Virus record (IMG/VR): IMGVR_UViG_3300046513_000221
Location: 199,414-263,413 of that record
Length of the DNA: 64,000 nt
Direction: 5' to 3' (one strand)
Shown here: one piece after another, positions 3-54,757 of the stretch
How positions within the stretch are numbered: position 1 is the stretch's first letter
How the letters are laid out: each line of letters begins with the position of its first letter
Translations under genes and position numbers: made by a program
The notes under the pieces: model-generated
Told to the model about the DNA's origin: nothing
Databases searched by the model: none
What the model saw: the letters and a program-made list of their open reading frames with translations, nothing else

Positions 3-626
3 TTCATCCAAGGCGTCGAGCAGATCGTCCGTGGATCCTTCGAGTACTCGAATTTCATCAAGTACCTGAAGACCGAGGCCAAGCTCACGTACTGCGATGT
101 GCTGACGGGCCTGAACGAGGACATCATGAAGGATCTCAGCCTTGAGATGCATCACTACCCGTTCACCCTGTACGACATCACAGAGACGGTGCTGATGAAG
201 CACCTGCTGAACAACATGGACTTCACCCGGCTGAGTATCGCCAACGAGGTGATGGACCTACACTTCTCCTTGCAGGTCGGGATCATTCCCCTGACTCTGA
301 CCGTCCACCAGCTGGCGCACAGCGGCGGGATCATCGCGGATCTGGACAACATCTTCGGCAACTACACGAAGTTCGCCGAGGACTACGAGCTTTTCATCCC
401 CGAACCTGCAATGACGAGGCTGAAGGTCTACGAGTCCAAGAGCAAGAACAAGGCTCTGCTCAAGAACACCAATCGCAACACGCTGGAATTCAACCCAGGC
501 CTGTTCGTCATCGACTACGAGCCTACCTCCGGCGATCCGGAAGTTGACCAGTGGGAGAAGGGCAAAAAGCCGCCACCTTGGGATCCAGTAGCGGCCTTCG
601 GTGAAGACACATCCTATGGAGATTGA
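3..626 (+). CDS. Conserved jumbo-phage protein with His-rich HNH-like motifs (5' end outside window)
   Basis: Frame open from window edge (FIQGVEQIVRGSFEY...); motifs EMHHYPFTL and LTVHQLAH; genome-typical codon usage. Confidence 0.6.
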   Translation, partial: FIQGVEQIVRGSFEYSNFIKYLKTEAKLTYCDVLTGLNEDIMKDLSLEMHHYPFTLYDITETVLMKHLLNNMDFTRLSIANEVMDLHFSLQVGIIPLTLTVHQLAHSGGIIADLDNIFGNYTKFAEDYELFIPEPAMTRLKVYESKSKNKALLKNTNRNTLEFNPGLFVIDYEPTSGDPEVDQWEKGKKPPPWDPVAAFGEDTSYGD

Positions 627-627
627 T

Positions 628-870
628 ATGAACGAACAGCAAGTACGAAGGGAATTGGCGGCACAGGTCGCCGCCGGGACCATCAGCGCGTGCGCCTGTA
701 TGGGTGCCGTGTACGGGGAACCGCACTGCCCTTGCAAAATGAAGCAACTCGGTCTCCCCAGCTCACCGGCGCACATCGCCGCCAACGAGAAGGCGAACGA
801 AGACCTCAAGAAGCTCTTCGGCCCCGGTGGCGTATTTCATCGACCCGCTCCCGCTCCAGAAAGTACTTGA
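628..870 (+). CDS. Small hypothetical protein with CAC...HCPC putative metal-binding motif
   Basis: GGAG RBS before ATG 628; 3' end overlaps the convergent glycosylase gene. Confidence 0.55.
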   Translation: MNEQQVRRELAAQVAAGTISACACMGAVYGEPHCPCKMKQLGLPSSPAHIAANEKANEDLKKLFGPGGVFHRPAPAPEST

Positions 871-1276
871 GCATGTGGTCCTCCGGAGCGATTTCCTGAT
901 ACCGCATCCCGAGAACGAAGATGCAGTAGGACTCCATAGCGTAGTTGCCGACCTGCGGTAGCTTCATGACGGACTCGAACGAGTGCCAATCCTCTGCTTC
1001 CGAATAGGCTCTCGACAGGGTTCTGATAGCCTGAGTCCTGACCACTCCGAAACCCAGCGGCTTGAGCAGGGTGTAGACCTCCTCGTCGGAGGCCAGTACA
1101 AGAAAGTCCTCCGGACTGGGGAACCTTCTGAATAACTCGACAGCGATAGGCTTCGCCACGCTGCCTCTTGCCCGGCGCACTAGAGTGGCGCAGACGAGAA
1201 CCTTCCAAGGATCGTTTGCGTACTCCTCCTGAACCAGCCGGTAACCTTCAGGTACGATATCAGTTCTAGTTGACAT
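806..1276 (-). CDS. MBD4-like HhH-GPD mismatch (U:G/T:G) DNA glycosylase
   Basis: LVQE..DPWKVLV, FPSPE, LLKPLG, LPQVGNYAMESYCIF, PEDH parallel the MBD4 glycosylase domain (LVQE..DPWKLL, LLKPLG, GIGKYGNDSYRIF, PEDH). Confidence 0.85.
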   Translation of the reverse strand: MSTRTDIVPEGYRLVQEEYANDPWKVLVCATLVRRARGSVAKPIAVELFRRFPSPEDFLVLASDEEVYTLLKPLGFGVVRTQAIRTLSRAYSEAEDWHSFESVMKLPQVGNYAMESYCIFVLGMRYQEIAPEDHMLKYFLERERVDEIRHRGRRAS

Positions 1277-1291
1277 GGCATCGAATCCTCC

Positions 1292-1303
1292 AACAGTAGC
1301 ATA
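1292..1303 (+). promoter_or_regulatory. AR9-type late promoter AACA-N6-TA
   Basis: AACA gtagca TA just upstream of ATG 1330. Confidence 0.65.
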
Positions 1304-1329
1304 GCAATTTCATATTTGGATCACACAAA

Positions 1330-1665
1330 ATGTTCGGATTCCTCAAACGTAAGCCGGTAGCTCCACCTCCGCTTCCAACCTTCGACTTCGAGAAAGATAC
1401 CCAGTATCTCTTCTCGATGATCGCGACCTACATTGAGAGCGAGAAGTTCAAGCTCCGGATTCACCAGAAGACCCTGATGACGGACAACGACATCACGGAG
1501 ATCTCCGTGGCGCTGCTCACCAGCGTCATCGAGTCCATCGCGGAGCCGTATCGCCGCATGCTCACCAAGTACATTCCCGATGAGAAGATCGACGACTTCA
1601 TCGCCGAGATCATCATCCGCAACATGGTGGAGGCAGGTATCACCATCAACCAATCGACAGTGTAA
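1330..1665 (+). CDS. Hypothetical protein
   Basis: 111 aa ORF, typical codon usage, downstream of late promoter. Confidence 0.7.
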   Translation: MFGFLKRKPVAPPPLPTFDFEKDTQYLFSMIATYIESEKFKLRIHQKTLMTDNDITEISVALLTSVIESIAEPYRRMLTKYIPDEKIDDFIAEIIIRNMVEAGITINQSTV

Positions 1666-1674
1666 GGAGAAAGC

Positions 1675-1983
1675 ATGGACAACCAGCATCAAAAGATTTC
1701 GGGTTACAGGGACTTCGGTCAGGAGACCATCGATAAGATCAACGAGATCAAGGGTCTGGGCAACGGCCAACTGAAGCCCCTGATCGACCGTCTGATAGCC
1801 GACCACGGCGCAGAGCTGCACCAGACGATCGGTATGCAGACCTCGATGACCGAGGAAGAGTACCTCGCCAAGATGGCCGAATTGGCCGACGCAAGCAAAA
1901 ACATGGGAACGGCACAGGAACATCTGCGTATCGGTTTCATGATGCTGATCCGGGTGGTCGCCCGTCCGAAGACCGAGTACTAA
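1675..1983 (+). CDS. acb2: Anti-CBASS protein Acb2 (cyclic oligonucleotide sponge)
   Basis: N-terminus MDNQHQKISGYRDFGQETIDKINEIK and C-terminus GFMMLIRVVARP closely match Acb2 ([20 protein letters not shown]...GMMAIIRAIAQP); AGGAG RBS. Confidence 0.9.
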   Translation: MDNQHQKISGYRDFGQETIDKINEIKGLGNGQLKPLIDRLIADHGAELHQTIGMQTSMTEEEYLAKMAELADASKNMGTAQEHLRIGFMMLIRVVARPKTEY

Positions 1984-1990
1984 GATCAAC

Positions 1991-2066
1991 GGGGCGTAAC
2001 TGTCACATACGGGAGACAGCGGGTGAAATACTCGGGCGCAGGGTTAAACTCCCTCACGCTCCACCA
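1991..2066 (+). ncRNA. tRNA-like RNA with alanine acceptor identity and atypical anticodon arm
   Basis: 76 nt; acceptor stem GGGGCGT/ACGCTCC with G3-U70, A73, encoded CCA; D arm CTGTC/GACAG; T arm AGGG-TTAAACT-CCCT at canonical positions; central arm CGGGT-GAAAT-ACTCG. Confidence 0.7.
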
Positions 2067-2111
2067 AAAAAGAAAGCACCTTGACACCGAAATGGCGTCA
2101 AGGTGCGTTTC
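2066..2111. terminator. Bidirectional intrinsic terminator
   Basis: GCACCTTGAC/GTCAAGGTGC hairpin flanked by A- and T-rich tails between convergent units. Confidence 0.7.
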
Positions 2112-2879
2112 TTACACCAGCAGCTGAATAAGCGGCTGAAGGAAGTTCTCGTAGTTGTAGCTGATGTCCAGCTCCTCAAGCTGATCATCCTGAATGTACT
2201 CGAAGTACACGTCGTTGCTCGCCAGCCGCAGCTTGAGCTTGTACTGGTAGATGGCGTTCAGTTCCCGGTAGTAGTCGTGAGCCAGCTCCAGACTGACGTA
2301 GCAGTGACGTAATTCTTGGAGATAGTCGAAGATGAACTGCTTGTCCTTGTACTCGTAGAACTTCATGAGAATCTTGATCTCTTCGATCAGATTGTCCTTG
2401 GCCTCCACGTCGTGATCCAGCCCCTTGAACCAGAACCTGTCGGTCTTGGCGTGCAGGAAGAACTCCTTCTTCCGCAGGAGCATGTATGACGATGCCGTCT
2501 CCCGGAGCGTGAAGACCACGTTGTCGAACTCCAGCACGGTCGGCTTCTGGTCGTACATCGTGATCGAGTCCTTCTTGACGCTGAGGATCCGGTCCTCGTC
2601 GATCTCGTTGTGCTCCCTGAAGAGCCTCATGTGCTCGATGAATCCGTCGTTCAGCTGCTTGACGAACTCCTTGTTGTCCCTCGCGTACTTACCGATCTCG
2701 ATGTGACGCTGCTTCTTGGTCATCCCGGATATCTGCTTGACGAACTTCTCGGGCAGCAGTCCGTTGTTCTTCGATATCGACCAGCCCCCCTCGATGATGT
2801 CGTACTCCTGAATGCTCTTGTTCTTCAGAACGAGAATGTCCTCGTTCAGGTAGACGAGTGAGTTCACGCTTCCAGACAT
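2112..2879 (-). CDS. Putative split DNA polymerase (PolB palm-related) subunit
   Basis: EYDI...ILSVKKDSI motifs resemble palm acidic motifs of the short polymerase-like protein of AR9/phiKZ-related phages. Confidence 0.45.
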   Translation of the reverse strand: MSGSVNSLVYLNEDILVLKNKSIQEYDIIEGGWSISKNNGLLPEKFVKQISGMTKKQRHIEIGKYARDNKEFVKQLNDGFIEHMRLFREHNEIDEDRILSVKKDSITMYDQKPTVLEFDNVVFTLRETASSYMLLRKKEFFLHAKTDRFWFKGLDHDVEAKDNLIEEIKILMKFYEYKDKQFIFDYLQELRHCYVSLELAHDYYRELNAIYQYKLKLRLASNDVYFEYIQDDQLEELDISYNYENFLQPLIQLLV

Positions 2880-2918
2880 AGTGTCTCCTCGTACAGTTGA
2901 TCTTTAGGTTTGTTTTGC

Positions 2919-2931
2919 GAATATATAATTC
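2919..2931 (+). promoter_or_regulatory. Putative early promoter core (GAATATATAATTC)
   Basis: Same ATATAT core as the sites at 19867, 25916, 40244 and 50450. Confidence 0.4.
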
Positions 2932-3040
2932 TCATGATTGCACTTGGGATGCGCATTGACATCCTTCAACATATAAATTATATATTTGTAATCGATTTCT
3001 CAATTTCCCGCACGGCGGGAGATGAATATCTGGAGAGTAA

Positions 3041-3553
3041 ATGAGTATTGCTTACTTCACGGTGCCGAACGATCAGCACCAAGTAACCAACATTGCGGCC
3101 GCGATGGATTCCCGTGATCTCGACGATCACGATATCATCAACATCGAAACGGTCAACGCCAACACTCTCGTGAAGGTATGGTTCCGCCAAGTTAAGATGG
3201 TTCCTTCCGGCGTCAAGGTCGCCGAGATTGATGTCTCGAAGGCTATGGCGTCCAACATGATCACCAATGCCGGTCAGCTGGTTGCCGCATTCGGCGCACC
3301 GCAGACCCGCTATGAGCCGCCTCCTAACCCGGACGCTCATCCGGAGACGAGCTACGACCCGGCAGGATGGACTCCGGGCGTCAAGTACGAGAAGGGTGAT
3401 AAGGTCACCCTCAACGGTGAAGTCAAGGTAATCGGCAATAGCGGTACCTCCGCAGATCTGGATCCGAAGCCAACCGTCCCAGCAACTGATGTAAATCAAG
3501 CCAAAAGCAAGATCGCACTGAAGTCGCTCCCGAACAGTAAGCACCGCCGCTAA
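3041..3553 (+). CDS. Putative virion protein with CBM5/12-like motif
   Basis: WTPGVKYEKGDKVTLNG fits W..G..Y..GD.V..NG; GGAG RBS. Confidence 0.55.
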   Translation: MSIAYFTVPNDQHQVTNIAAAMDSRDLDDHDIINIETVNANTLVKVWFRQVKMVPSGVKVAEIDVSKAMASNMITNAGQLVAAFGAPQTRYEPPPNPDAHPETSYDPAGWTPGVKYEKGDKVTLNGEVKVIGNSGTSADLDPKPTVPATDVNQAKSKIALKSLPNSKHRR

Positions 3554-3556
3554 ACG

Positions 3557-3596
3557 AAAAATGCTATATGGGTCAACAGATTCATATAGCATTTTT
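3557..3596 (+). terminator. Intrinsic terminator, overlapped by an AACA-N6-TA motif (3575-3586)
   Basis: AAAAATGCTATATG/CATATAGCATTTTT inverted repeat. Confidence 0.65.
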
Positions 3597-3640
3597 ATCG
3601 ATTTCGCGTTATAATGCAAAGATGTGGCCGAGGGTGCAAA

Positions 3641-4021
3641 ATGAGTAAACGTAAACAGAGTAAGCAAGATAAAGAAGCCTTGGAGTTGGAGCGCAAGCTC
3701 GGCGGTCTCTTGGGCTGGGTTAACATCGAGCAATCATTGGCAGTTGATGGTACCGTCATCTTCACGGGGATTGCACCGAAGAGCAGTAAGGTCAGCGTCC
3801 TCCCGCAATGGGTACGCGACTGGCGCGACTGCGGTCCTCTGCTGACTCAGGTCAGTATGATCGCGATCTACATCGACAAGGACGCCGACGAGATCGAGTG
3901 TCATGTCAATTCTCCAAACATGTCGAAGTACAATGACTTGGCACTGCGCATGGGGATCGTCGAATCCTTTATTGACGACATCGAAGAACAGAAAGAAGAA
4001 GAACCTGTATGCTCCAGCTAA
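3641..4021 (+). CDS. Hypothetical protein
   Basis: ORF with GAGGG RBS, coupled to the RNAP gene. Confidence 0.6.
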   Translation: MSKRKQSKQDKEALELERKLGGLLGWVNIEQSLAVDGTVIFTGIAPKSSKVSVLPQWVRDWRDCGPLLTQVSMIAIYIDKDADEIECHVNSPNMSKYNDLALRMGIVESFIDDIEEQKEEEPVCSS

Positions 4022-5367
4022 AACCACGTAACATCGACGATGCATTCGTCGAAGCAAATCTGATCACCAATCACGAGCCACTGAGCAGCGATGCCAAGTT
4101 CACCCTCGACGGCGTCTTCTCCGAGAAGATCTTCGGCACGATGGCGAACGGCATCGACTACTCCTGCACCTGCGGGTGCTATCAAGGCGAGTTCAACAAG
4201 GGCTACGAGTGCGAGATCTGCAACGACCCTGTCGTGTTCAAGGGTCTGGCGCTGAAGAAGGAAGGCTGGATCGATCTGGAGTACCCGATCATCCACCCGG
4301 TCTTCTACCGCTACCTGAAGAAGATCATCGGTGCGACCAATCTGCAGTCGATCATCAACTACAAGGGCAAGATCAAAGTGTCCGGCCAGCTGGACGAGGC
4401 TCCGCTGGAGTACCCGTTCCACGAGATCGGCATGATGCGTTTCATCGAGAACTTCGAGACCATCGTGGACAGCTACATCAGCCAGAAGTCCGAGAAGGCC
4501 GTCAAGCACGCCAAGGATATCGCCTTCATCGTCGAGCATCAGGAGCTTGTGTTCATCACCAAGTACCCGATCATCAACAGCCGCCTCCGTCCGGCGACCA
4601 TCCTGAACGGCGAGTTCAGCTTCGACGCGATCAACAACCTGTACAACGGCATCATCCGTGGCTCCGGTCTGCTGCGCGATCTGACCGAGATCGAGAAGAA
4701 CGACATGAACATCCTGTCTCTGGTCTACAAGAACCAGATGCTGGTGAACGAGTTGTTCGATACCGTCATCGACACGCTGTCCAACAAGGACGGCTACATC
4801 CGTGGCTCCCTGATGGGATGCCGCCTGAACTGGTCGAGCCGCAACGTCATCACGCCGCTGACCGGCAAGTACGGTATGGACCAGTGCGTCATGCCTTACC
4901 TGACCGCGATCGAGCTGCTGAAGCCGCTGATCATGCGCAAGCTGCAGAAGCTGAAGAAGATCAGCATCGCGGCGGCGCACAAGATCTGGTTCGAGGCCAA
5001 TCTGGTCTACAACAAGCTCGTGCACAGCATCATGCGCGAGCTGGTGAAAGAAAACAACATCCGGATCCTGCTGAACCGTAATCCGACGATCTCGGTAGGC
5101 TCTATCCTGATGCTGGAGGTAGCCGATATCAAGGAGGACATGGAAGACGTCACCTTGAGCATCTCCAACCTGATCCTGCCGTCCATCTCCGGCGACTACG
5201 ACGGAGACGTTCTGAACATCGTCATGCTGTTCTCCAAGGCGTTCGTCGATCTGTTCCGTCCATTCATGCCGAGCAACCTCGTCATCGACACCGACAGCGG
5301 CGAGTTCAACGGCAATTTCGCACCGTTCAAGGACGTGGCTATCGGCCTCCAGTCCATCGTGAACTAG
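4009..5367 (+). CDS. Multisubunit RNA polymerase beta' N-terminal subunit (catalytic; probably non-virion RNAP)
   Basis: GVFSEKIFG, Zn finger CTCG..CEIC, LRP, SSRNVI, LLNRNPTI, catalytic GDYDGD. Confidence 0.92.
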   Translation: MLQLKPRNIDDAFVEANLITNHEPLSSDAKFTLDGVFSEKIFGTMANGIDYSCTCGCYQGEFNKGYECEICNDPVVFKGLALKKEGWIDLEYPIIHPVFYRYLKKIIGATNLQSIINYKGKIKVSGQLDEAPLEYPFHEIGMMRFIENFETIVDSYISQKSEKAVKHAKDIAFIVEHQELVFITKYPIINSRLRPATILNGEFSFDAINNLYNGIIRGSGLLRDLTEIEKNDMNILSLVYKNQMLVNELFDTVIDTLSNKDGYIRGSLMGCRLNWSSRNVITPLTGKYGMDQCVMPYLTAIELLKPLIMRKLQKLKKISIAAAHKIWFEANLVYNKLVHSIMRELVKENNIRILLNRNPTISVGSILMLEVADIKEDMEDVTLSISNLILPSISGDYDGDVLNIVMLFSKAFVDLFRPFMPSNLVIDTDSGEFNGNFAPFKDVAIGLQSIVN

Positions 5368-16166: not shown

Positions 16167-18233
16167 TTACTCTTCGTCGCCGCGTTCATCCTGCAGCGTT
16201 TCGAGGGCTTCTTCCTCCATCCCCTCGTTCTCCATCGTGATACCGATACCAGAGAAGTACGAGCGAATCACCTGTGCGGCATTCGTGATCGTGTTCTCGG
16301 TGTCGGTGCCGATGTTGACGCGGTTGATGTTCTGGATGTCGTTGCGCAGCAGCTTGACGATCTGGTTCCGGCGCTCCACGTTGTGCGAGGAGTAGTGACG
16401 CAGGAAGTTCACGATCGGCTTGGAACCTTCTGGGCCGTTGGACAGCATCAGCATGTTGAACGTCTCCTGCTCGCCGAAGCGGATCGGAGACGAGTTGTTC
16501 ATCGCGGTACCCTTCTTGTACTGCTCGTTGCTCTTGAACGGAACGTTGAGCAGACTGATCTGACCAGCCGAGCGAACGGAGAACTTCGACGCGGCCTCGT
16601 GCTTCAGCTGAATGAAGTACATGTCGCCGAGGATCTGCGCCTGAAGCAAGCCCTCGAATTTGAGCTTGTTGATGCCGAAGTGGTTATACAGGTTCGACAT
16701 GATCTGCGGCGTGGCGTTCTCGAAGAAGGGAGGCTGATGGATGTACAGACCCTTCTCGAAGACGGCCTCGCAGTAAGCGTCGATGAACTCGTCGGAGTCC
16801 GGCTGCGTATCGGCGAACTCCAGCAGCTCGGTACGCTGCAGCGGGTTCAGGATCTCGAAGAACTCCAGAATCGCGTTGAAGAGCCAGTAATTGCGCTCCA
16901 ATACCACGCTCTTCGCCTTGAGGATGATCTCGTTGGCGATGAAGTTCAGCTCCTGCTCGAACAGCTGTGCGATGTTCATACGCCCGGTGACGCCGAGCGG
17001 ATTCAGCACCACATCCGGGATGCGACCGTCTGCCGTGCGCGGCATCTGGTCATCCGGGATGATGGCGGAGATAACGCCCTTGTTGCCGTAGCGACCGGTG
17101 ATCTTCGAACCGATGTAGATGCCGTGGTCCTTGCGGATTTTGAAGCGCAGCACAGCACCCTCGAACTCGGAGCGATCCTGACTGAACTTGATGCCCGAGT
17201 TGTAGTCCTTGGCCTTCTGGAACAGGAAGCCGACATCGTCGCGCAGGGTCCAGCCGTTCTCTTTGAACTGAGTGATCATGTCCTCCAGTTCCTGATACTT
17301 GGCCTTGTTGTGCTCGATCAGGACGCGGATCGGCTCGTTGAAGGTGTAAGCCAGATCCTTCTCAGCGAAGTTGCTGAAGACCTCGATGTCCTCGATGACG
17401 CCGTCGAAGAAGAAGCAGGTGTCGGTGCGCTCGATGGTCGCGCCGTTCTCCTTGAAGTCGTTCAGGATCGAACTGTAGTTGATCCGGCGACGGGCCGCGA
17501 GGATGCCGCCCTTGATCTTCTGACCGACCGTCGGGAACGGCTGGTGACGACCCTTGTCGCCGTACAGGTTCAGCAGAACGTCGTTGTTGTTGACGACGAT
17601 GTCGGCTTCGGTCACGGAGGTGTGACTGAACTTTTTAGCACCCGACGCACTGAGTGGGATGCCGTCTTCGAAGGTCAGACCGTCTTTCGCGAGAAACAGC
17701 ACGTTCAGGTTGACGCCGTACTTCAGATTCAGGCCGTCGTCGTACATGTTGGTGCGCTCCAGCAGCGTTCCGGCCTCCAGAGTATCCCCGAACTCCATCT
17801 CGGGCATTTTCCGTACGTTTTTGTGCCCATAGTTCTCGGTCAGGCGCGACACGGAGGTGTGGTGGAAGACGCCCACGGACTCGTCGCCGTACAGGAAGAA
17901 GTGGTACGCGTTGTTCTCGTTGAACTCCACGGTGCCAATGAAGGTGGCGTCCTCGGTCAACTGGGTGTAGCCCATGCCGTGCGAGTACTTACCGACCTGA
18001 TTCTCGAAGCGGCTGAAGACCTTCGGGATCTCTCCCTCGTTCAGCGTCAGTGCCTGACCGATCTGGCCGGTGAACATGTTCAGGCGCGAGCCATCACATT
18101 TGTTGACGTTTGGAGTGAGGACGTCCTCACCCAAGAAGTAATGGGGTGGTCTTTCCGTCACCACCTCGACGGCCTTAGCGGTTGCGGTCTTCTTGATGAC
18201 CTTGGCTGCTTCGGTTGGTTTCTTCTTTGCCAT
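16167..18233 (-). CDS. Multisubunit RNA polymerase beta C-terminal subunit (probably non-virion RNAP)
   Basis: GVNLNV, TFEDG, GSKITGRYGNKGVIS, NPLGVTGRMNIAQLFE, YFIQLKH, RFGEQE. Confidence 0.93.
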   Translation of the reverse strand: MAKKKPTEAAKVIKKTATAKAVEVVTERPPHYFLGEDVLTPNVNKCDGSRLNMFTGQIGQALTLNEGEIPKVFSRFENQVGKYSHGMGYTQLTEDATFIGTVEFNENNAYHFFLYGDESVGVFHHTSVSRLTENYGHKNVRKMPEMEFGDTLEAGTLLERTNMYDDGLNLKYGVNLNVLFLAKDGLTFEDGIPLSASGAKKFSHTSVTEADIVVNNNDVLLNLYGDKGRHQPFPTVGQKIKGGILAARRRINYSSILNDFKENGATIERTDTCFFFDGVIEDIEVFSNFAEKDLAYTFNEPIRVLIEHNKAKYQELEDMITQFKENGWTLRDDVGFLFQKAKDYNSGIKFSQDRSEFEGAVLRFKIRKDHGIYIGSKITGRYGNKGVISAIIPDDQMPRTADGRIPDVVLNPLGVTGRMNIAQLFEQELNFIANEIILKAKSVVLERNYWLFNAILEFFEILNPLQRTELLEFADTQPDSDEFIDAYCEAVFEKGLYIHQPPFFENATPQIMSNLYNHFGINKLKFEGLLQAQILGDMYFIQLKHEAASKFSVRSAGQISLLNVPFKSNEQYKKGTAMNNSSPIRFGEQETFNMLMLSNGPEGSKPIVNFLRHYSSHNVERRNQIVKLLRNDIQNINRVNIGTDTENTITNAAQVIRSYFSGIGITMENEGMEEEALETLQDERGDEE

Positions 18234-24125: not shown

Positions 24126-24391
24126 TACTTCTTCTCGCTTTCCTTCTTGACGTACTCCACGCCGTCGATGACAACGGCGGTCGCCAGCGATTTACCTTCC
24201 GGGACCGTCGCGGAAGTGATACTGTTCGGGCAACGCATGACGGTCAGGCGCTGTCCGTCAGTATTCGTGAGGTAGAAGGTTTTGCAGTCCTTCAGTTCGG
24301 ACGGCATCGAAGCGAAGTAGAGGGTCTTGGCGCTGTCTACGCAGCCGGTCAGAGCCAGCATCGATGCCAGCAGAATTGCGATACGCTTCAT
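24125..24391 (-). CDS. Lipoprotein
   Basis: MKRIAILLASMLALTG-C lipobox; TAATG coupling to upstream gene. Confidence 0.75.
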   Translation of the reverse strand: MKRIAILLASMLALTGCVDSAKTLYFASMPSELKDCKTFYLTNTDGQRLTVMRCPNSITSATVPEGKSLATAVVIDGVEYVKKESEKK

Positions 24392-25875
24392 TACATACGC
24401 TCCAGGAAAGAAAGAACCTCGCTGATGAGAGGCTTCGGGTTCTCCTCGATTGCTTCGAGGTAGGACGACAGGTCGTTCGACTCGTCGTGGCTTGGCAGGT
24501 ACTCGAACTCGGTACTCATGATGTCGCCGATGAACACGATGATCGACTTGTTCTCTTCGATCTTCTCGCGGATGAGCGAGTACTTCGAGAGGATGTTGTG
24601 GTAGGACTTGGACTGCACGATCTCGGTGACCAGCTTGCCCTTGTGCAGGTTGCGACGGCCACCCTTCGGACGGATCTGCGCCGTGAGGATCGCCGCCAGC
24701 GTGTAGTACTTTTGATCGAGCAGCCACTGGCGGAAGATCATCAGCATGTACAGGTATTCCTCGCGGTTGCACAACTGGACGTTGATCTTGTCCTGTGCGC
24801 CGAGATAGTGCGTCATCAGGCGCACCTGCATCTGGTTGGGCTGCACCTTGCGGGTGTTGTACGCCAGCTCCTCCGGCGAGAACCGCATCTTGCGGCGATC
24901 GATGAAGTTCTTGATGTTCTCCTTGTCGATCGTGTACTGCATCTCGTTGGAGTTCACCAGACGCATCTCGACGCGTTGGAACGGGCTGACGTTGCTCTCG
25001 TTGCTGTCGGTGCGGATCTGGCTGATCGGCTTGAAGTTGATCTTGATGTTCTGCGTGAACTGGTACATGATCTGCTGCTTGATCACGACGTGCAGGAAAG
25101 AGACGATCGACTTGTTGATGTCGAGCTTCGGTATCGTGTCCCGTACGATCTTGCGGAACAGGTCAAGCGACATGACGTGTTCGTCCACCGAGATGTTCTT
25201 CAGGTACTCCCACATGACGCGGTCGGAGTACAGGGTGTTGTTGACGGAGGACTTAATGAACTTCGTGATCTTCTGCGGCAGGTCCAGCTCCACGCCGTGC
25301 TCGTCGATGTTGAACACACCGAAGATGCGATTGAACACGTTGATCGTGATGTCCTGCTCCTTCTTGATCTGCATCACGTCCATATAGGAGCAGATCAGAG
25401 GGATGACGATTCTCGACATGATCGAGATGCAGATCACCATCTTGGCGTAGGAGTCCTTGAACTGTAGTTCCTCCTCGCCGGTGCGGGTCTCGATCGAGAT
25501 CGTGTACTCCGCATTCACCTTCTCGCGGATGGCCGTTTGCAGGATCTCGTCGCTGATCAGCTGCTCGAACAGGAAGTCGATGAACAGATTCACGTCGCCG
25601 AATGGCACACCTTCCTCGGTATGACCCTCGATGAAGGTACCGTCCTGGATGTTCATCATCACAGTCAGGTAGCTCTCCGGCAGGTCGTCGTAGAGGTCGA
25701 AGAAGTACTTCAGATCCTCGACGATCTTACCGATGATCGAGTTGTACACTCGCTTTCGGTTGATGGGAAAGAGGCAGTACTTGGCCTCCTCCCCGATGTT
25801 AAACAGCTGGGTGAAATCGAAGGTGAAGTCCTTCTCGTTCACACCAAACAGACTATCAATATTCGTGATCGTCAT
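24391..25875 (-). CDS. Putative nvRNAP promoter-specificity subunit (AR9 gp226/phiKZ gp68-like)
   Basis: 494 aa helical protein; SIMSRIVIPLI motif recalled from this family; early promoter directly upstream. Confidence 0.5.
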   Translation of the reverse strand: MTITNIDSLFGVNEKDFTFDFTQLFNIGEEAKYCLFPINRKRVYNSIIGKIVEDLKYFFDLYDDLPESYLTVMMNIQDGTFIEGHTEEGVPFGDVNLFIDFLFEQLISDEILQTAIREKVNAEYTISIETRTGEEELQFKDSYAKMVICISIMSRIVIPLICSYMDVMQIKKEQDITINVFNRIFGVFNIDEHGVELDLPQKITKFIKSSVNNTLYSDRVMWEYLKNISVDEHVMSLDLFRKIVRDTIPKLDINKSIVSFLHVVIKQQIMYQFTQNIKINFKPISQIRTDSNESNVSPFQRVEMRLVNSNEMQYTIDKENIKNFIDRRKMRFSPEELAYNTRKVQPNQMQVRLMTHYLGAQDKINVQLCNREEYLYMLMIFRQWLLDQKYYTLAAILTAQIRPKGGRRNLHKGKLVTEIVQSKSYHNILSKYSLIREKIEENKSIIVFIGDIMSTEFEYLPSHDESNDLSSYLEAIEENPKPLISEVLSFLERM

Positions 25876-26936: not shown

Positions 26937-28637
26937 TTAGATCAGCTGGTTGATACTCAGGAGCATGCCCACGATCGAGACGGACGCCTTGAGGATCTGG
27001 ACGTCGGTGTCGATAGGCGCGAGGACTTGTGTTTCCTCGATGCTCTGGAACTGGCGCTCCAGTACGTCGTACATGCGCGAGTCATTCATGTGCAGCGCCT
27101 CGCGGATCATCTCCAACGCCTCCGGTTGGGAGCGCAGGACAGGATCCTTGCTGATGATGCAGTAGAACGTGTTGTAGTACACGTCGCGCAGACGGTCGAT
27201 GACCTGACGCGTGAACTCCAAGTCGAACTGCTTCAGCACCGCGTCGTCCGCATGGATCTCGTCCCAGCGGTTGGCGATAGAATTGGCCGCAAAGAACAGC
27301 GAGATGTTGCCGCCGAATCCGAAGCCCTTCAGCAGGGCCGATTTACAGGCCAATACGGCATCCTCCACGAGGAATCGACGCGTCTGCTTCTCTTCGGCGG
27401 TGATGCCGCCCACCAGAATGCGAACGGACACGCCGTTCAGCTTGGACAGACGGATGCGCAGGTTACCGCGTACCGAAGGCTGGCTGATGGGAGTCTCATC
27501 GAACTCCTTCTGCAGAACCTGCAGACGCTCGCCGTAGAACGGGGTGTTCAGGGTCATGCCCTGACCTGCGAGGAAGACCGATTTGGTTCCGGTCAGTTCG
27601 AGGCTGCTCGCCGCACCGAGTTGCTTCAGGTCGAAGGTCGCCGGGTCGCGGATGATGTCGGAGTCCAGATAGATTGCCAGATCGAGGAACTCGTCGTGCT
27701 GCAGCTGGCTCGACAGATCGTACGTCTTGACGATGTAGATCTTGTTCTGCTTGCGCAGGAAGTCTGCCATGCAGGTGTTCAGAACGTCCTGATGGGTCTG
27801 GTCGGTGATGACGACGATGTTGCGCGCCGGGTTCGCCTGTTGGACCTTCTTCAGCAGCTCATAGTGCTCGCCGAAGAACTCGTAGCTCATGAACACGATC
27901 GGCTTGTCTACCGTGATGGTGGACTTGTCGCCGAAGTACATGTTGTGCGCCGGACCACGATCGAACGTGAAGCCGTAACGCATGGTGTGTGACACAGGTG
28001 TCAGCGAATCGCGTGGATCCTCTTCGATGCGCACATCCGACAGATAGGACAGACCGGAGAAGACGTTGGCGATGTACTCACCGATGCGTACATCGTTGTT
28101 GTTCGAGATCTGGCTGATGGCCGTCAGCACGCGCTTGCGGTTGTCGCCATTCACCTGATGGGTGTACTTATTCTCGATCTCGCGTTCGAGATAGAACACC
28201 ACGCGGTCCAGCAGATCCAGCAGCTGCTTGCGGGTGTACTTCCGGTCGCGCAGGTCCATCAGGGCTTCATACATGAAGCTCGCCGACAGAACGGCACTGG
28301 TGGAGCCGTCGCCGACGGTCTTGACCAGATTGTAGGACACCTTCTTCAGCAGCTGGTGGACGGCGACGTCCTGCGCAGCAGCATACTTCAGGTTCTCCAG
28401 AATGGTGTAACCATCCTTGGTGATGATCGGAACACCACCATCATTCTCGATCATGGTGTTCGAGCCCAGCGGACCATAGCTCTTCGCCAGAACGCTGACC
28501 AGCGAGGTCAGGAACTTCAGCGTATCACTGTGGAACTGAGCGTCATCCTTGATGACACCTTGGAAAGGCGACGGCGAACCCATTTGCTGGGCCACAGTCG
28601 TCTCGGCAGGTTTCTTTCTTTTCAAAAATTCGAACAT
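26937..28637 (-). CDS. groEL: Phage chaperonin (GroEL-like)
   Basis: SYGPLG, ITKDGYTIL, VGDGSTSA, VGG, EDAVLA, GGN. Confidence 0.9.
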   Translation of the reverse strand: MFEFLKRKKPAETTVAQQMGSPSPFQGVIKDDAQFHSDTLKFLTSLVSVLAKSYGPLGSNTMIENDGGVPIITKDGYTILENLKYAAAQDVAVHQLLKKVSYNLVKTVGDGSTSAVLSASFMYEALMDLRDRKYTRKQLLDLLDRVVFYLEREIENKYTHQVNGDNRKRVLTAISQISNNNDVRIGEYIANVFSGLSYLSDVRIEEDPRDSLTPVSHTMRYGFTFDRGPAHNMYFGDKSTITVDKPIVFMSYEFFGEHYELLKKVQQANPARNIVVITDQTHQDVLNTCMADFLRKQNKIYIVKTYDLSSQLQHDEFLDLAIYLDSDIIRDPATFDLKQLGAASSLELTGTKSVFLAGQGMTLNTPFYGERLQVLQKEFDETPISQPSVRGNLRIRLSKLNGVSVRILVGGITAEEKQTRRFLVEDAVLACKSALLKGFGFGGNISLFFAANSIANRWDEIHADDAVLKQFDLEFTRQVIDRLRDVYYNTFYCIISKDPVLRSQPEALEMIREALHMNDSRMYDVLERQFQSIEETQVLAPIDTDVQILKASVSIVGMLLSINQLI

Positions 28638-52210: not shown

Positions 52211-54757
52211 TTACAGGTATTCCAGCGTGATGTCATACCGGAAATCGTTACCCTGATCGTCCGAGCCGCTGATCTTCTTGACCGTGAGGAACTCCGGTAC
52301 ATAGCTGATCTGGTTGAAGCTCGTGTTTGCGTTCGCCTCGACGTTCTGGATGTTGGCGTTGTTGACCGAGTACAGCTGGATGTACGCAATGATCGGGAAA
52401 GCCTTCTCCAGAGATGTGATCAAGTTCGAGGTCGAGAAGCGTTTATCGAGGGTACTGTTACAGTTCTCGATGAACGACACGATCGCTTTCTTGATGTCGC
52501 CCTCCAGCGAGGCAGACTGAACGCCGCGCAACTTGATCTGGAACTTCAGACGGAGATCTACGATATCCGACGAGAAATTCTTGCTGATACCCATCGTGTT
52601 GAAGAACTTGACGTCCAGTTCGGTGTTATTCTCCAGAAGCTCGGTAGCATCTTTCAGCGCTCCGAACAGTTGGAGGATCGTGGACATCATGTCCTTGTTG
52701 TACTTCTCGTTGTAGTAGAAGTTGCCGTTCACCAGCGGCACGCGCTCGACGACCACGTTGCCGGTGTTCTGGTTGATGGTCACAGGGCAGTAGACCAGCT
52801 CGGAAACGTCCTCGGCAAAGCCGATCGTGTCCAGACCAGTGTACTCGACGATAGGCACATCGTCCAGCGAGTTGAAGGAGCCGTTGTAGACCCCGATGTC
52901 GATGGTGTAGTCGCCGCTCAGTGCGATCTCCGGGATGATTACCTCCGGCGCGTTCGGCTCGTAGAAGGTATTCTCCACGATGTACTGACCGCGCGAGTTG
53001 AACGAATCGCTCGTGTTCACGTTCAGATAGTAGACGGTCGAGTCAGGGATGCTGCTCATCTTCGCCACACCGATCAGCTTGCCGTTCTGGTTGATCTTGG
53101 CGACCAGCACGAGGTTGCTGATGTCCTTCACATCGGTCAAGACGTTCAGGGTGATCTTGAACTTGTCCAGATCCACGAGGTTATTACGCTGAACGTTGTA
53201 GCTCGTGATGTTGATCTGGTTGGCCGTGTCGTAGTTCACCGCGTTCAGCTTGGCGTTGACATTGATGTCCTTGGAGTACGTGGTCACGTACGAGTTGATC
53301 TTCGGGAACTCCTCGAAGTCCAGGTTCATCAGGAACGGGGTAGTGAACACATACGAGTCGTTGTTGTACAGGTACGGGTCAGGGATCTCGTTCGACTTCA
53401 GCAGACGGTAGCGCGACGACTCGCGGTCGTACACGATGATCGAGCCGGGAGCAATCGAGAACTTACGCTCGGTAAGCTCATCGAAGGGGATCTCCAGACT
53501 GACCGTGTTGGTCGGGATGATCTCACCGGACGACAGGCGCATCAGCACGTACATCGAGTAGATGCGGCGGAAGAAGTCGTCCCGGACCTTGATGGTCTTC
53601 ACTTCGAGGTTCGCCCGGATACGGCTCTGCTTCAGGTCGCGGAACAGCGTGTCCAGATCGTACTCGGTGATGTAGGACTCGCGGGTACGCAGCTTGTCGA
53701 TCAGAGCGATCTTCGATTCCTTGAAGTTCAGCTGGTTCGAGCCACCCGTCACACCGGCGTCCGGCAGATTGTGCAGCGTGTAGCCGATCGGTTCGAGGAA
53801 GCTGTCCTTGATGGTAACGTTACCGAAGTACGGGAAGTTACCCGCCAGACCTTCGGAGGTCAGCAGCTCAACCTGAATGCGGGAGTTGAACTCAGGACGG
53901 AACTTGGCGGCACCGGTAGCGAAGTACACACGCAAGGTCGAGTCATTCACCAGTGTGTAATACGCGTACTGAGGGACGGTAGGCTCGTCGGACTCGTTGA
54001 AGTACATCGTCAGGTCCGACCACACGGTCGGGGCGCTGACCTTATCAGCCGGTGTCTGATAGCCTACCTTGAAAGCGACCAGATTCGAGCCGAAGTTGAT
54101 GTCGTACAGCGAGCGCTCCAGAATGTCGTTGGTCAGGACATCGTACACCACCTTCTTCTTGCGGAGCTGGTAGATGTTGAACGTGATCGTGGCGTTGACG
54201 CCGTCGATCAGTACCGGCAGGTTCTCGGACGTGATGAACTTATCATCGTAGTTGGTCGTCGAGGTCGAGCGGTTGTAGAACGCGACCACGGATGGGATCG
54301 TACCATTGAACTTGGCGTGGATCTCGATCTCGTGCGGCAGCATGAAGTTCAGGCCACCGATGGTGAAGTTCGTGTCCTTGGTCAGCTTGAAGACCCGGTA
54401 GCCGCTGGCGGTGTCGCCGGAGCTGGAGATGCTGGAGGTGGACATCAGCTTCTGGATGTTGATCGTCAGCGCGACGTGGGTCTGCGACGGCTTCGCAAGA
54501 GCGATGTTGTAGTTCAGGATCTTCGCCCAGTTGTAGAGCGAGTTCTTCAGCGATGCGGAGTTCAAGAAGAACTCCTTGTACAGCATATTCCGGTGGAAGG
54601 TGCTGTCCTTCGCAGTGTGCGACGTGATGCCGGTGATGTAGCCAAACATACCGGTCTTAGCGGTCGAGATGTCATCGATGTTCATGAAGCTCGCCGCCAT
54701 AGCGAGGAACTTCTCATCGTAGTTGTAACTCACCTCGGAGATATTATTCTCTGCCAT
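52211..54757 (-). CDS. Baseplate wedge protein (T4 gp6/gpJ-like)
   Basis: EFFLNSASLKNSLYNWA..Y..AKPS; VYFATG; GLAGN; ITEYD. Confidence 0.7.
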   Translation of the reverse strand: MAENNISEVSYNYDEKFLAMAASFMNIDDISTAKTGMFGYITGITSHTAKDSTFHRNMLYKEFFLNSASLKNSLYNWAKILNYNIALAKPSQTHVALTINIQKLMSTSSISSSGDTASGYRVFKLTKDTNFTIGGLNFMLPHEIEIHAKFNGTIPSVVAFYNRSTSTTNYDDKFITSENLPVLIDGVNATITFNIYQLRKKKVVYDVLTNDILERSLYDINFGSNLVAFKVGYQTPADKVSAPTVWSDLTMYFNESDEPTVPQYAYYTLVNDSTLRVYFATGAAKFRPEFNSRIQVELLTSEGLAGNFPYFGNVTIKDSFLEPIGYTLHNLPDAGVTGGSNQLNFKESKIALIDKLRTRESYITEYDLDTLFRDLKQSRIRANLEVKTIKVRDDFFRRIYSMYVLMRLSSGEIIPTNTVSLEIPFDELTERKFSIAPGSIIVYDRESSRYRLLKSNEIPDPYLYNNDSYVFTTPFLMNLDFEEFPKINSYVTTYSKDINVNAKLNAVNYDTANQINITSYNVQRNNLVDLDKFKITLNVLTDVKDISNLVLVAKINQNGKLIGVAKMSSIPDSTVYYLNVNTSDSFNSRGQYIVENTFYEPNAPEVIIPEIALSGDYTIDIGVYNGSFNSLDDVPIVEYTGLDTIGFAEDVSELVYCPVTINQNTGNVVVERVPLVNGNFYYNEKYNKDMMSTILQLFGALKDATELLENNTELDVKFFNTMGISKNFSSDIVDLRLKFQIKLRGVQSASLEGDIKKAIVSFIENCNSTLDKRFSTSNLITSLEKAFPIIAYIQLYSVNNANIQNVEANANTSFNQISYVPEFLTVKKISGSDDQGNDFRYDITLEYL

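What the first reader, a model, noticed from the sequence alone, without database searches (positions are those of the whole stretch)
806..1276. MBD4-like mismatch glycosylase in a jumbo phage: a possible way to keep GC high in dU-DNA
Seen: near-colinear similarity to the MBD4 glycosylase domain, including PEDH (catalytic Asp), and no Fe-S cysteines of Nth/MutY. Known: MBD4 excises U or T only from U:G/T:G mismatches. Inference: in a dU genome UNG cannot be used, so C deamination goes unrepaired and drives AT enrichment. A mismatch-specific glycosylase would repair U:G while sparing U:A, which could explain this GC-rich genome. Alternatively it repairs deaminated modified cytosines.
Basis: partly seen in the sequence, partly recalled or inferred. 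Interest (0 to 1): 0.72.

Follow-up and report, generated by a model that had tools for sequence, protein, structure and literature searches.

The report
MBD4-like mismatch glycosylase in GC-rich uracil-DNA-type jumbo phages
A giant phage from rhizosphere soil, close kin of the phages that write their DNA with uracil instead of thymine, carries an intact gene resembling the MBD4 repair enzyme (which cuts U or T only when mispaired with G); the gene was found only in the GC-rich branch of this group, so a link between one repair gene and genome composition can now be tested.

Summary
Window 806-1276 (minus strand) encodes a 156-aa clusterless helix-hairpin-helix glycosylase. Its best solved relatives, by sequence (E 5e-15) and by fold (TM 0.71-0.84), are all MBD4 glycosylase domains. 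The catalytic Asp (PEDH) and the pocket and wedge residues are conserved.

The genome (263,413 bp, terminal repeats, 55% GC) is sister to Yersinia phage phiR1-37. It keeps phiR1-37's dU-DNA enzymes (dCTP deaminase and a HAM1-type dTTPase homologue) in the same gene order. It has no thymidylate synthase, dUTPase or UDG. It keeps proteins reported as exclusive to U-DNA phages and the RNAP specificity-subunit residue that excludes thymine. A dU genome is therefore likely, but not shown.

The predicted link with GC content exists:
- The gene is in this genome, in one related IMG/VR record and on five related metagenomic contigs (50-62% GC).
- It is absent from complete AT-rich relatives (phiR1-37, AR9, one further genome).
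- The GC-rich carriers placed on the tree form one clade, so this is a single evolutionary event. Cause and effect remain open.

Homologues in phage XP12 (all-5mC DNA) and two other phage contigs sit beside pyrimidine-modification genes. Activity on U:G versus U:A is untested.

The parts
806..1276 (-). MBD4-like clusterless HhH DNA glycosylase gene (156 aa, P0001). Residue map to human MBD4: L14-V15-Q16 = L447-V448-Q449; R35 = Arg468 wedge; G38 = G471; L74 = L506; hairpin LPQVG 106-110; Y112 = Tyr540; D133 = catalytic Asp560.
1282..1286 (-). GGAGG ribosome-binding site 5 nt upstream of the ATG. The 53-bp spacer 1277-1329 is shared with the divergent gene 1330-1665 (+). It holds an AACA-N6-TA late-promoter-type word on the + strand and only an imperfect AACA-N6-GT on the minus strand.
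   Evidence: sequence read directly
601..870 (+). Small Cys-rich ORF (89 aa) that overlaps the 3' end of the glycosylase gene by 65 nt, convergently. A counterpart in the same position exists in the related contig L002 (49% identity over 49 aa).
24391..25875 (-). Homologue of the AR9 gp226 / phiR1-37 g245 non-virion RNAP promoter-specificity subunit. It keeps the YSDxVxW block, including the Val equivalent to AR9 V206 that sterically excludes thymine at promoter position -10.
   Evidence: PMC9209446
25950..26837 (-). [quoted passage not shown]
   Evidence: PMC10303552 Table 3
52211..54757 (-). Homologue of phiR1-37 g207 (39% identity over 99%), also reported as exclusive to uracil-DNA phages. 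Used here as the clade marker.
   Evidence: PMC10303552 Table 3
16167..18233 (-). Split RNAP beta-subunit gene. Best phage match is phiR1-37 g261 (40%), then AR9/PBS1 (37%), then Staphylococcus S6-like phages (31%).
4009..5367 (+). Split RNAP beta'-type subunit gene, 73% identical to its counterpart on the syntenic contig L002.

Best explanation
The gene encodes a functional, monofunctional glycosylase of the MBD4 type, in a jumbo phage that very probably replaces thymine with uracil in its DNA.

Proposed mechanism. The enzyme scans duplex DNA and flips out a pyrimidine with a uracil-like face (U, also T) into the pocket formed by V15/Q16/Y112. The R35 loop enters the gap and reads the orphan base as guanine. 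D133 activates hydrolysis of the N-glycosidic bond. Recognition needs a G opposite, so the phage's normal U:A pairs are spared. U:G pairs, whether from cytosine deamination or from dUMP misinsertion out of the dUTP-rich pool made by the phage's own dCTP deaminase, become abasic sites. These are restored to C:G by an AP endonuclease, a polymerase and a ligase, which must come from the host or from unrecognised phage genes. This fills the gap left because UNG-type repair is unusable on a dU genome. Every U:G is resolved towards C:G, so the repair is GC-biased.

Shown: family, fold, intact active-site residues, purifying selection, restriction to the GC-rich clade, and conservation of the dU gene set.

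Inferred: dU in the virion DNA, substrate specificity, the downstream repair steps, and any effect on GC content.
For: Identity. MBD4 domains are the top sequence hits and the top 16 fold hits with a pLDDT 94.5 model. Residues named by the MBD4-DNA structures (Val448, Gln449, Arg468, Gly471, Leu506, Tyr540, Asp560; PMC3479182) are conserved. Q16, Y112 and D133 are invariant across phage and eukaryote-type homologues. Tyr stands where bifunctional HhH enzymes have the lyase Lys.

Functionality. A variant strain shows 9 synonymous changes out of 10, and the gene has an RBS.

dU context.
- Nearest phages are phiR1-37, AR9/PBS1 and S6.
- The Dcd homologue is 34% identical and the HAM1-type Dtt homologue 26% identical over 293 aa, in phiR1-37 order g100-g101-g102-g103-g121 (PMC12697855).
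- There is no ThyA, dUTPase or UDG. The only ThyX signal is a 13-bit hit in a shadow frame.
- g207 and g244 homologues are present (PMC10303552).
- The V206 equivalent is kept.
- AR9-type AACA-N6-TW words are 3.4-fold enriched in intergenic DNA and pile up 25-100 nt upstream of starts. ATATATTAT-type early-promoter words are enriched.

Distribution.
- The best database hits are on contigs of related phages of 50-62% GC. With this protein they form one group of 6 among 151 homologues.
- The gene is absent from complete phiR1-37, G006 and AR9, which have no glycosylase of either superfamily.
- GC3 of one orthologous gene is 0.70-0.85 in the carrier clade (G000, G010 and the fragment G004) and 0.21 in the sister clade.

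Against: - No chemistry: dU in this phage's DNA is inferred from kinship and gene content only.
- The HAM1-type protein is only 26% identical to the characterised Dtt, and tblastn missed the match at E 1e-5, so its dTTPase specificity is unproven.
- K562 of MBD4 is Met here.
- Pfam HhH-GPD is just below its threshold.
- No phage AP endonuclease of the Xth or Nfo type was found, so the repair path is incomplete on the phage side.
- No canonical early or late promoter word lies upstream of the gene, and no RNA data exist.
- The gene occupies three different genomic positions among clade members, which fits mobility as well as inheritance.
- The GC correlation is one phylogenetic event.
- Two more distant records of 43% GC lack the gene.
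Confidence: 0.6

Rival explanations
1. The biochemistry is the same, but there is no role in base composition. The glycosylase repairs U:G (or T:G) as housekeeping, and the 50-62% GC of this clade simply tracks GC-rich rhizosphere hosts. The gene is kept because a GC-rich genome has more cytosines to lose, so high GC is the cause and not the effect.
For: Phage GC generally follows host GC (general knowledge). The carriers placed on the marker tree (G000, G010) fall in one clade, giving one event. The samples are rhizosphere metagenomes. GC-only restriction sites are purged (sum O/E 0.13), as expected with hosts whose R-M systems target GC-rich sites.
Against: Known dU jumbo phages lie far below their hosts in GC: PBS2 28% against 48%, phiR1-37 33% against 47% (PMC8150378). 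So host tracking is not the rule in this group. The GC3 jump from 0.21 to 0.70-0.85 between sister clades coincides with the gene.
Confidence: 0.45
2. Counter-defence. The enzyme mainly reverses damage done by host DNA cytosine deaminases or other deaminating defences to phage DNA, rather than spontaneous deamination.
For: The activity (U:G to an abasic site to C:G) would serve this purpose. The gene sits at variable positions among small accessory genes, as counter-defence genes often do (general knowledge).
Against: No defence-related partner or inhibitor domain was seen. The gene is conserved across a whole clade at 35-60% identity, and a variant strain shows 9 of 10 synonymous changes. Homologues in other phages sit in nucleotide-metabolism clusters rather than anti-defence islands.
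Confidence: 0.1
3. Different substrate or different genome chemistry. The phage DNA is not dU, or carries another modification, and the enzyme removes T from T:G after 5mC deamination (host Dcm-type methylation) or another lesion such as 5hmU or an etheno adduct.
For: MBD4 also excises T, 5hmU and 5-FU (PMC3479182). Homologues in XP12 (all-5mC DNA) and on two other phage contigs lie next to ThyA-family and dCMP-deaminase genes. CCWGG is strongly depleted (39 observed, 290 expected).
Against: This genome has no ThyA-family enzyme and no C5-methyltransferase, and the CCWGG depletion leaves few Dcm sites. The dU gene set and the thymine-excluding RNAP residue are conserved.
Confidence: 0.12

Closest known systems
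MBD4 (MED1) C-terminal glycosylase domain of animals (PDB 4E9E, 6VJW, 4EVV, 1NGN, 3IHO)
   Same: Same clusterless HhH fold (TM 0.71-0.84, about 32% identity). Same catalytic Asp in PEDH, the LVQE pocket, the Arg wedge in the (L/V)xR loop, KPLG, and Tyr in the hairpin in place of the lyase Lys.
   Different: No methyl-CpG-binding domain or linker: it is a stand-alone 156-aa protein. Lys562 is Met. It has an extra C-terminal helix (residues 134-155). It is encoded by a phage whose 'T' is probably U, so U:G rather than T:G in CpG context would be the main substrate.
MBD4-like ORFs of 5mC phage XP12 (gp61) and relatives (Xanthomonas, Stenotrophomonas AXL_1, Janthinobacterium Donnerlittchen phages)
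   Same: Stand-alone phage proteins of the same family (30-31% identity) with Gln, Tyr and Asp conserved. They occur in phages with non-canonical pyrimidine DNA.
   Different: These are small siphoviruses of about 60 kb. XP12 gp61 lies directly beside HAD hydrolase, 'thymidylate synthase', dCMP deaminase and DHFR genes. The wedge Arg is Leu in XP12 gp61. The expected substrate there is T:G from 5mC deamination. They are annotated only as 'hypothetical', 'ENDO3c' or 'endonuclease III'.
MUG/TDG (UDG family 2) mismatch-specific uracil glycosylases
   Same: The same proposed job: remove U (or T) opposite G with little or no activity on U:A (PMC8150378).
   Different: An unrelated fold (UDG superfamily). 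No UDG-superfamily gene exists in this genome or in its relatives.
MIG / Nth / MutY HhH glycosylases with an Fe-S cluster
   Same: HhH-GPD superfamily. MIG (1KEA) is also a T/U:G mismatch glycosylase and is the next-best fold hit.
   Different: Those enzymes carry a C-terminal Cys4 Fe-S cluster and are about 210-350 aa. Sequence matches are weak (E 4.5e-3 or worse, apart from one Nth at 1e-7).
Yersinia phage phiR1-37 (dU-DNA jumbo phage)
   Same: Sister lineage: 39-40% identity in marker proteins, nearly equal genome size (262,391 against 263,413 bp), the same Dtt-g101-RNAP-Dcd-helicase order, and the same RNAP specificity subunit.
   Different: phiR1-37 is 33% GC with GC3 of 0.21, and it has no glycosylase gene of either superfamily.

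Membership tests
MBD4-type clusterless HhH-GPD glycosylase | HhH-GPD fold closest to the MBD4 catalytic domain | tested here: met
   AF2 model pLDDT 94.5. The 16 best PDB fold hits are all MBD4, TM 0.71-0.84.
MBD4-type clusterless HhH-GPD glycosylase | Catalytic Asp (human Asp560) following the HhH motif | tested here: met
   D133 in PEDH aligns with MBD4 PEDH. It is invariant in 49 and in 10 homologues. Asp560 is named catalytic in PMC3479182.
MBD4-type clusterless HhH-GPD glycosylase | Base pocket Val448/Gln449/Tyr540 and the Arg468 wedge loop | tested here: met
   V15, Q16, Y112 and R35 align. Q449A is inactive in MBD4.
MBD4-type clusterless HhH-GPD glycosylase | No Fe-S cluster (no Cys-X6-Cys-X2-Cys-X5-Cys) | tested here: met
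   Only C29 and C118 are present, and there is no C-terminal Cys motif.
MBD4-type clusterless HhH-GPD glycosylase | Monofunctional (no lyase Lys in the HhH second helix) | tested here: met
   Y112 occupies the position of MBD4 Tyr540 in the G-x-Y hairpin. The placement of the lyase Lys at this site in bifunctional enzymes is from general knowledge.
MBD4-type clusterless HhH-GPD glycosylase | Pfam HhH-GPD above the gathering score | tested here: inconclusive
   24.6 bits against a cut-off of 26.2. Relatives on other contigs carry the precomputed PF00730 hit.
MBD4-type clusterless HhH-GPD glycosylase | Excises U/T opposite G but not U opposite A | not testable with these tools
   Needs an enzyme assay. 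Inferred only from conserved residues.
Full-length MBD4 orthologue | N-terminal methyl-CpG-binding domain | tested here: not met
   The protein is 156 aa and consists of the glycosylase domain only. It is therefore MBD4-like, not an MBD4 orthologue.
dU-DNA jumbo phages (phiR1-37 / AR9-PBS1 / S6 group) | Thymidine replaced by deoxyuridine in virion DNA | not testable with these tools
   Sequence reads report U as T. This needs LC-MS or a UDG-sensitivity test.
dU-DNA jumbo phages (phiR1-37 / AR9-PBS1 / S6 group) | Phage dCTP deaminase (Dcd) plus a dT-nucleotide hydrolase (HAM1-type Dtt in phiR1-37) | tested here: met
   PF00383 at genome 78,247-78,816 (-) and PF01725 at 82,521-83,552 (-). They are 34% and 26% identical to phiR1-37 g103 and g100, in conserved gene order. 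Activities are known only for the phiR1-37 enzymes (PMC12697855).
dU-DNA jumbo phages (phiR1-37 / AR9-PBS1 / S6 group) | No thymidylate synthase and no dUTPase | tested here: met
   PF00303 and PF00692 are absent. The PF02511 hit of 13 bits lies in a non-coding shadow frame.
dU-DNA jumbo phages (phiR1-37 / AR9-PBS1 / S6 group) | Proteins reported as exclusive to U-DNA phages (g207, g244) and the gp226-type specificity subunit with the thymine-excluding Val | tested here: met
   PMC10303552; PMC9209446. g196, g234 and g278/g282 were not checked.
dU-DNA jumbo phages (phiR1-37 / AR9-PBS1 / S6 group) | Phylogenetic placement inside the group | tested here: met
   In the marker tree this genome, G004 and G010 are sister to phiR1-37 and G006 (support 99/98), and all lie within the AR9/S6 assemblage.

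The most novel reading that the evidence does not exclude
Stand-alone MBD4-like glycosylases may be a phage toolkit for genomes written with non-canonical pyrimidines, acting on U:G in dU-DNA phages and on T:G in 5mC phages such as XP12. In the phiR1-37 lineage, gaining this one gene would have imposed GC-biased base excision repair. That would have removed the C-to-U decay that keeps other dU phages at 25-35% GC, and allowed silent-site GC to rise from about 0.2 to 0.7-0.85. A single repair gene would then set the base composition of a 260-kb genome.
Probability: 0.25. Interest if true: 0.85.

Novelty: new variant of a known kind. Interest (0 to 1): 0.66.

Why it matters
Uracil-DNA phages pose an unanswered question. 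If U is a normal base, a cell or virus cannot tell a deaminated cytosine from a legitimate U, and UNG-type repair becomes lethal rather than helpful. Known dU jumbo phages are strikingly AT(U)-rich compared with their hosts, and none of those examined here encodes a glycosylase.

This work shows that a GC-rich sister clade carries an intact mismatch-dependent glycosylase of the MBD4 type. That is exactly the logic needed to repair U:G while ignoring U:A. The hypothesis can be tested with one recombinant protein and three oligonucleotide duplexes.

It also gives a function to 'hypothetical' ORFs that sit in the 5-methylcytosine gene cluster of phage XP12 and in other pyrimidine-modification clusters. 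It offers a marker pair (dU module with or without the MBD4-like gene) for sorting metagenomic jumbo phages. It suggests a compact U:G/T:G-specific, U:A-blind glycosylase that may be useful as a reagent. Searches of the open-access literature found no description of MBD4-like glycosylases in phages.

Tried and rejected
- Megablast of 12 kb of the window against 50,697 phage records: no match.
- Word-based search of 5.8 billion proteins: only the protein itself was found. The exhaustive HMMER search was needed.
- Single-sequence AlphaFold2 model: pLDDT 52, unusable. It was replaced by the alignment-based model.
- The search for related loci with alignment A1 failed because no conserved stretch was available. 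The neighbouring gene 2112-2879 found no viral contig.
- ThyX: the 13-bit hit lies in a shadow ORF antisense to the real gene, so it was rejected.
- Modified-cytosine reading for this phage: no ThyA-family enzyme and no C5-methyltransferase, so it was rejected here.
- Phage-encoded downstream repair: no Xth-type or Nfo-type AP endonuclease. Ligase and repair polymerase were not searched.
- tblastn of the HAM1-type protein did not reach phiR1-37 at E 1e-5. Homology was shown only by pairwise BLASTP together with synteny.
- Three IMG/VR contigs of 34% GC with 33%-identical homologues (L006-L008) have no RNAP gene, and one has a ThyA homologue. They are a different phage type and were not pursued.
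- Transcription evidence: no RNA run holds this DNA.
- Host assignment: the window has no tRNAs and the only source information is 'rhizosphere metagenome'. The host GC is therefore unknown.
- My crude codon-usage gene caller did not call this ORF. Its GC3 of 0.68 is about 1 SD below the genome mean of 0.76. Homology and the synonymous-substitution pattern show that it is nevertheless a real gene.
- Complex prediction was not used, because jobs with DNA get no verdict.
Full report
1. THE OBSERVATION

Window 806-1276 on the minus strand holds an ATG-started ORF of 156 codons. A GGAGG site lies 5 nt upstream.

Sequence evidence:
- phmmer against every PDB chain returns 15 MBD4 glycosylase-domain sequences first (E 4.9e-15 to 3.9e-13). 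They are colinear over residues 12-139.
- Far weaker matches follow, to endonuclease III, MIG and MutY.
- Pfam's general HhH-GPD model scores 24.6 bits, just under its 26.2 cut-off. PHROGs has nothing.

Fold evidence:
- A single-sequence fold failed.
- With a 49-sequence alignment, the AlphaFold2 model reaches pLDDT 94.5.
- Its 16 best Foldseek hits in the PDB are all MBD4 catalytic domains (TM 0.71-0.84, rmsd about 2 A, 29-33% identity). MIG follows, then Nth and MutY.

Active-site residues were mapped using the human MBD4-DNA structures (PMC3479182):
- L447-V448-Q449 corresponds to L14-V15-Q16.
- The inserting Arg468 corresponds to R35, and G471 to G38.
- L506, whose carbonyl reads the orphan guanine, corresponds to L74.
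- Tyr540 corresponds to Y112, and catalytic Asp560 to D133 in PEDH.
- Only Lys562 differs (Met).
- There are two cysteines and no Fe-S motif.

The gene is also alive. A variant strain present in two other rhizosphere runs differs at 10 positions within it. Nine of these are synonymous and one changes N21 to D. There are no indels.

2. THE GENOME

The window is the last 64 kb of a 263,413-bp IMG/VR virus record with direct terminal repeats and 55.2% GC. It comes from a rhizosphere metagenome.

The window encodes split beta and beta' RNAP subunits, a GroEL-like protein and class I ribonucleotide reductase.

By tblastn, the RNAP beta subunit and an 848-aa protein match best to Yersinia phage phiR1-37 (39-40%). 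Next come Bacillus AR9/PBS1 and then Staphylococcus S6-like and Listeria LPJP1 phages. That is exactly the set of known or presumed uracil-DNA jumbo phages.

A maximum-likelihood tree of the 848-aa marker places this genome with two IMG/VR records (G004, G010) as sister to (phiR1-37, G006). All branches are strongly supported.

3. IS IT A dU PHAGE?

This cannot be read from sequence, but seven indirect tests all point the same way.

(a) dU enzymes. PMC12697855 showed that phiR1-37 makes dU-DNA with a dCTP deaminase (g103) and a HAM1-family dTTP pyrophosphatase (g100). This genome has a dCMP-deaminase-family gene and a long HAM1-family gene 4 kb apart. They are 34% and 26% identical to g103 and g100. 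They sit in the same order as in phiR1-37: g100-g101-g102-g103-helicase g121. The same pair is present in G006 and G010.

(b) Missing enzymes. There is no ThyA, dUTPase or UDG-superfamily gene. The sole ThyX signal is a 13-bit hit in an antisense shadow frame.

(c) U-DNA-phage proteins. Homologues of g207 and g244 are present. PMC10303552 lists both as found only in uracil-DNA phages.

(d) RNAP specificity subunit. The homologue of AR9 gp226 keeps the YSDxVxW block, including the Val (AR9 V206) whose side chain clashes with the thymine methyl group at promoter position -10.

(e) Promoter words. The AR9 late-promoter word AACA-N6-T(A/T) is 3.4-fold enriched in intergenic DNA and piles up 25-100 nt upstream of start codons. 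ATATATTAT-type early-promoter words, as annotated in phiR1-37 and AR9, are also enriched.

(f) Restriction-site avoidance scales with the lack of A/T letters in six-base palindromes:
- G/C-only sites have sum O/E 0.13. Four of the eight are absent altogether.
- Sites with two A/T letters have O/E 0.69, with four 0.87, and with six 1.26.
- This fits the finding that dU protects T-containing sites. It would equally fit GC-rich host restriction systems.

(g) Modified cytosine. No C5-methyltransferase is encoded, so nothing suggests modified cytosine.

I put dU-DNA at roughly 75-80%.

4. DISTRIBUTION OF THE GENE

An exhaustive HMMER search of 1.84 billion representative proteins finds 1,398 homologues at E <= 1e-3. 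Many are long proteins with the domain at the C-terminus, as in eukaryotic MBD4.

The best hits lie on contigs that tblastn shows to be fragments of related phages. P0012, 12th in the list, joins them on the tree:
- P0002 (60% identical) is on L002 (58% GC), fully syntenic with window -111..4824.
- P0003 (40%, 312 aa) is on L013 (62% GC), beside the virion RNAP beta subunit and the HAM1-type gene.
- P0004 (41%) is on L012 (50% GC).
- P0012 is on L034/L035 (53-55% GC), syntenic with L013.

A profile search of 15 IMG/VR records of the wider group adds G010, a 137-kb fragment of about 51-55% GC.

These proteins form one group of six among 151 homologues.

Complete genomes of phiR1-37 (33% GC), G006 (34.5%) and AR9 (28%) have no homologue. 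Neither do the 84-94% complete records G014 (26.5%) and G018 (43%). None of them has a UDG- or HhH-superfamily glycosylase of any kind.

In one orthologous gene, GC3 is 0.85, 0.84 and 0.70 in the GC-rich clade (carriers G000 and G010, and the fragment G004, where the gene was not found). It is 0.21 and 0.21 in the sister clade, and 0.17 and 0.13 in AR9 and S6.

However, the GC-rich carriers that could be placed on the tree form one clade. This is a single gain (or a single loss in the sister lineage), and hosts are unknown. Causation is open in both directions.

5. WIDER PATTERN

Among sequenced phages, the only other tblastn hits of about 30% identity over most of the protein are XP12 and its relatives. 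XP12 is the classic phage with all cytosines replaced by 5-methylcytosine (PMC7653180). Shorter, weaker hits (65-70% of the query) are cyanophage S-TIM54 and an archaeal virus.

In XP12 the homologue (gp61, 'hypothetical') lies directly upstream of HAD hydrolase, 'thymidylate synthase', dCMP deaminase and DHFR genes.

Two metagenomic homologues sit in comparable clusters:
- P0010 lies with DCD/dUTPase, dCMP deaminase, carbamoyltransferase, dNK and a ThyA homologue.
- P0031 lies with a C5-methylase, an Asn-synthase-like gene, a ThyA homologue and dCMP deaminase.

The family therefore recurs in phages that alter their pyrimidines. Deamination of 5mC gives T:G, and deamination of C in dU-DNA gives a U:G that UNG logic cannot handle. 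An enzyme that requires a guanine opposite solves both problems.

Full-text searches found no paper describing MBD4-like glycosylases in phages.

6. MECHANISM AND RIVALS

The best-supported reading is a monofunctional glycosylase that flips U (or T) out of U:G/T:G pairs, leaves U:A alone and starts base excision repair. The later steps would be supplied by the host, since no Xth or Nfo gene is present.

A glycosylase that always removes the U resolves every U:G to C:G. That is inherently GC-biased repair.

Rivals:
- GC is set by the host, and the gene is a consequence of high GC rather than its cause.
- The selective driver is host DNA deaminases.
- The substrate or the DNA chemistry is different.

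None can be excluded without an assay.

7. VERDICT

The enzyme family is known. Its presence and apparent role in phages with non-canonical pyrimidine DNA is a new variant worth bench work.

Noticed in passing
whole genome G000 (window = G000 199,414-263,413): Six-base palindromes made only of G and C are almost eliminated: CCCGGG 0 observed/62 expected, CCGCGG 0/81, GCCGGC 0/95, GGGCCC 0/13, GGCGCC 1/58, CGGCCG 7/86. CTCGAG is 0/131. Avoidance fades as A/T letters increase (sum O/E 0.13, 0.69, 0.87, 1.26). CCWGG is 39/290 and CTAG 189/357.
   Followed up: partly
L033 (Xanthomonas phage Xp12, NC_073033.1 46,973-47,455, gp61): The all-5mC phage XP12 encodes an MBD4-like protein annotated 'hypothetical'. 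It lies immediately upstream of HAD hydrolase, 'thymidylate synthase', dCMP deaminase and DHFR genes. Related ORFs exist in Stenotrophomonas AXL_1, Janthinobacterium Donnerlittchen and other Xanthomonas phages.
   Followed up: partly
contig of P0010 (ENA ERZ1426827, no DNA served) and L039:10001-10384: Two further phage contigs place the MBD4-like gene inside pyrimidine-modification clusters. One has DCD/dUTPase, dCMP deaminase, carbamoyltransferase, dNK and a ThyA homologue. The other has a C5-methylase, N6/N4-methylase, an Asn-synthase-like gene, a ThyA homologue and dCMP deaminase.
   Followed up: no
window 601-870 (+): A small Cys-rich ORF (89 aa, with motifs CACMG and HCPC) overlaps the 3' end of the glycosylase gene by 65 nt, convergently. 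The same arrangement is conserved in L002. In the variant strain it carries 2 non-synonymous and 3 synonymous changes.
   Followed up: partly
L013:1042-1980 (P0003): In a 62% GC relative the MBD4-like domain (residues 5-135) is followed by an extension of about 170 aa of unknown function. The gene lies about 3 kb from the virion RNAP beta subunit and the HAM1-type gene. The glycosylase gene thus occupies at least three different genomic positions within the clade.
   Followed up: no
window 1669-1710: In the variant strain of two other runs, a dense cluster of 17 substitutions plus a 1-nt deletion and a 1-nt insertion falls at the start of the small gene 1675-1983 (+). Flanking DNA differs at about 1-2%.
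   Followed up: no
window 26937-28637 (-) and 46152-48995 (-): A GroEL-like chaperonin (Cpn60_TCP1, phrog 'chaperonin groEL') and a class I ribonucleotide reductase large subunit with an ATP-cone are encoded in the window.
   Followed up: no
G000 38,398-38,574 (L001): A 13-bit ThyX (PF02511) hit falls in a shadow ORF antisense to the real gene. In this high-GC3 genome, long antisense ORFs are common and can produce false family hits.
   Followed up: yes
G015 and G018 (L028, L031; IMG/VR records of 179 and 242 kb, 43% GC): A distant branch of the marker tree (23% identity) has intermediate GC, a weak dCMP-deaminase-family hit, no HAM1-type gene and no glycosylase. Whether these phages use dU is unknown.
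   Followed up: no
one search hit list: At least 86 of the 150 best homologues listed are proteins of 250 aa or more, most with the domain at the C-terminus (the eukaryotic MBD4 architecture). They are as similar to the phage protein (31-43%) as most stand-alone prokaryotic or viral ones. The evolutionary direction between phage and eukaryotic MBD4 domains was not examined.
   Followed up: no
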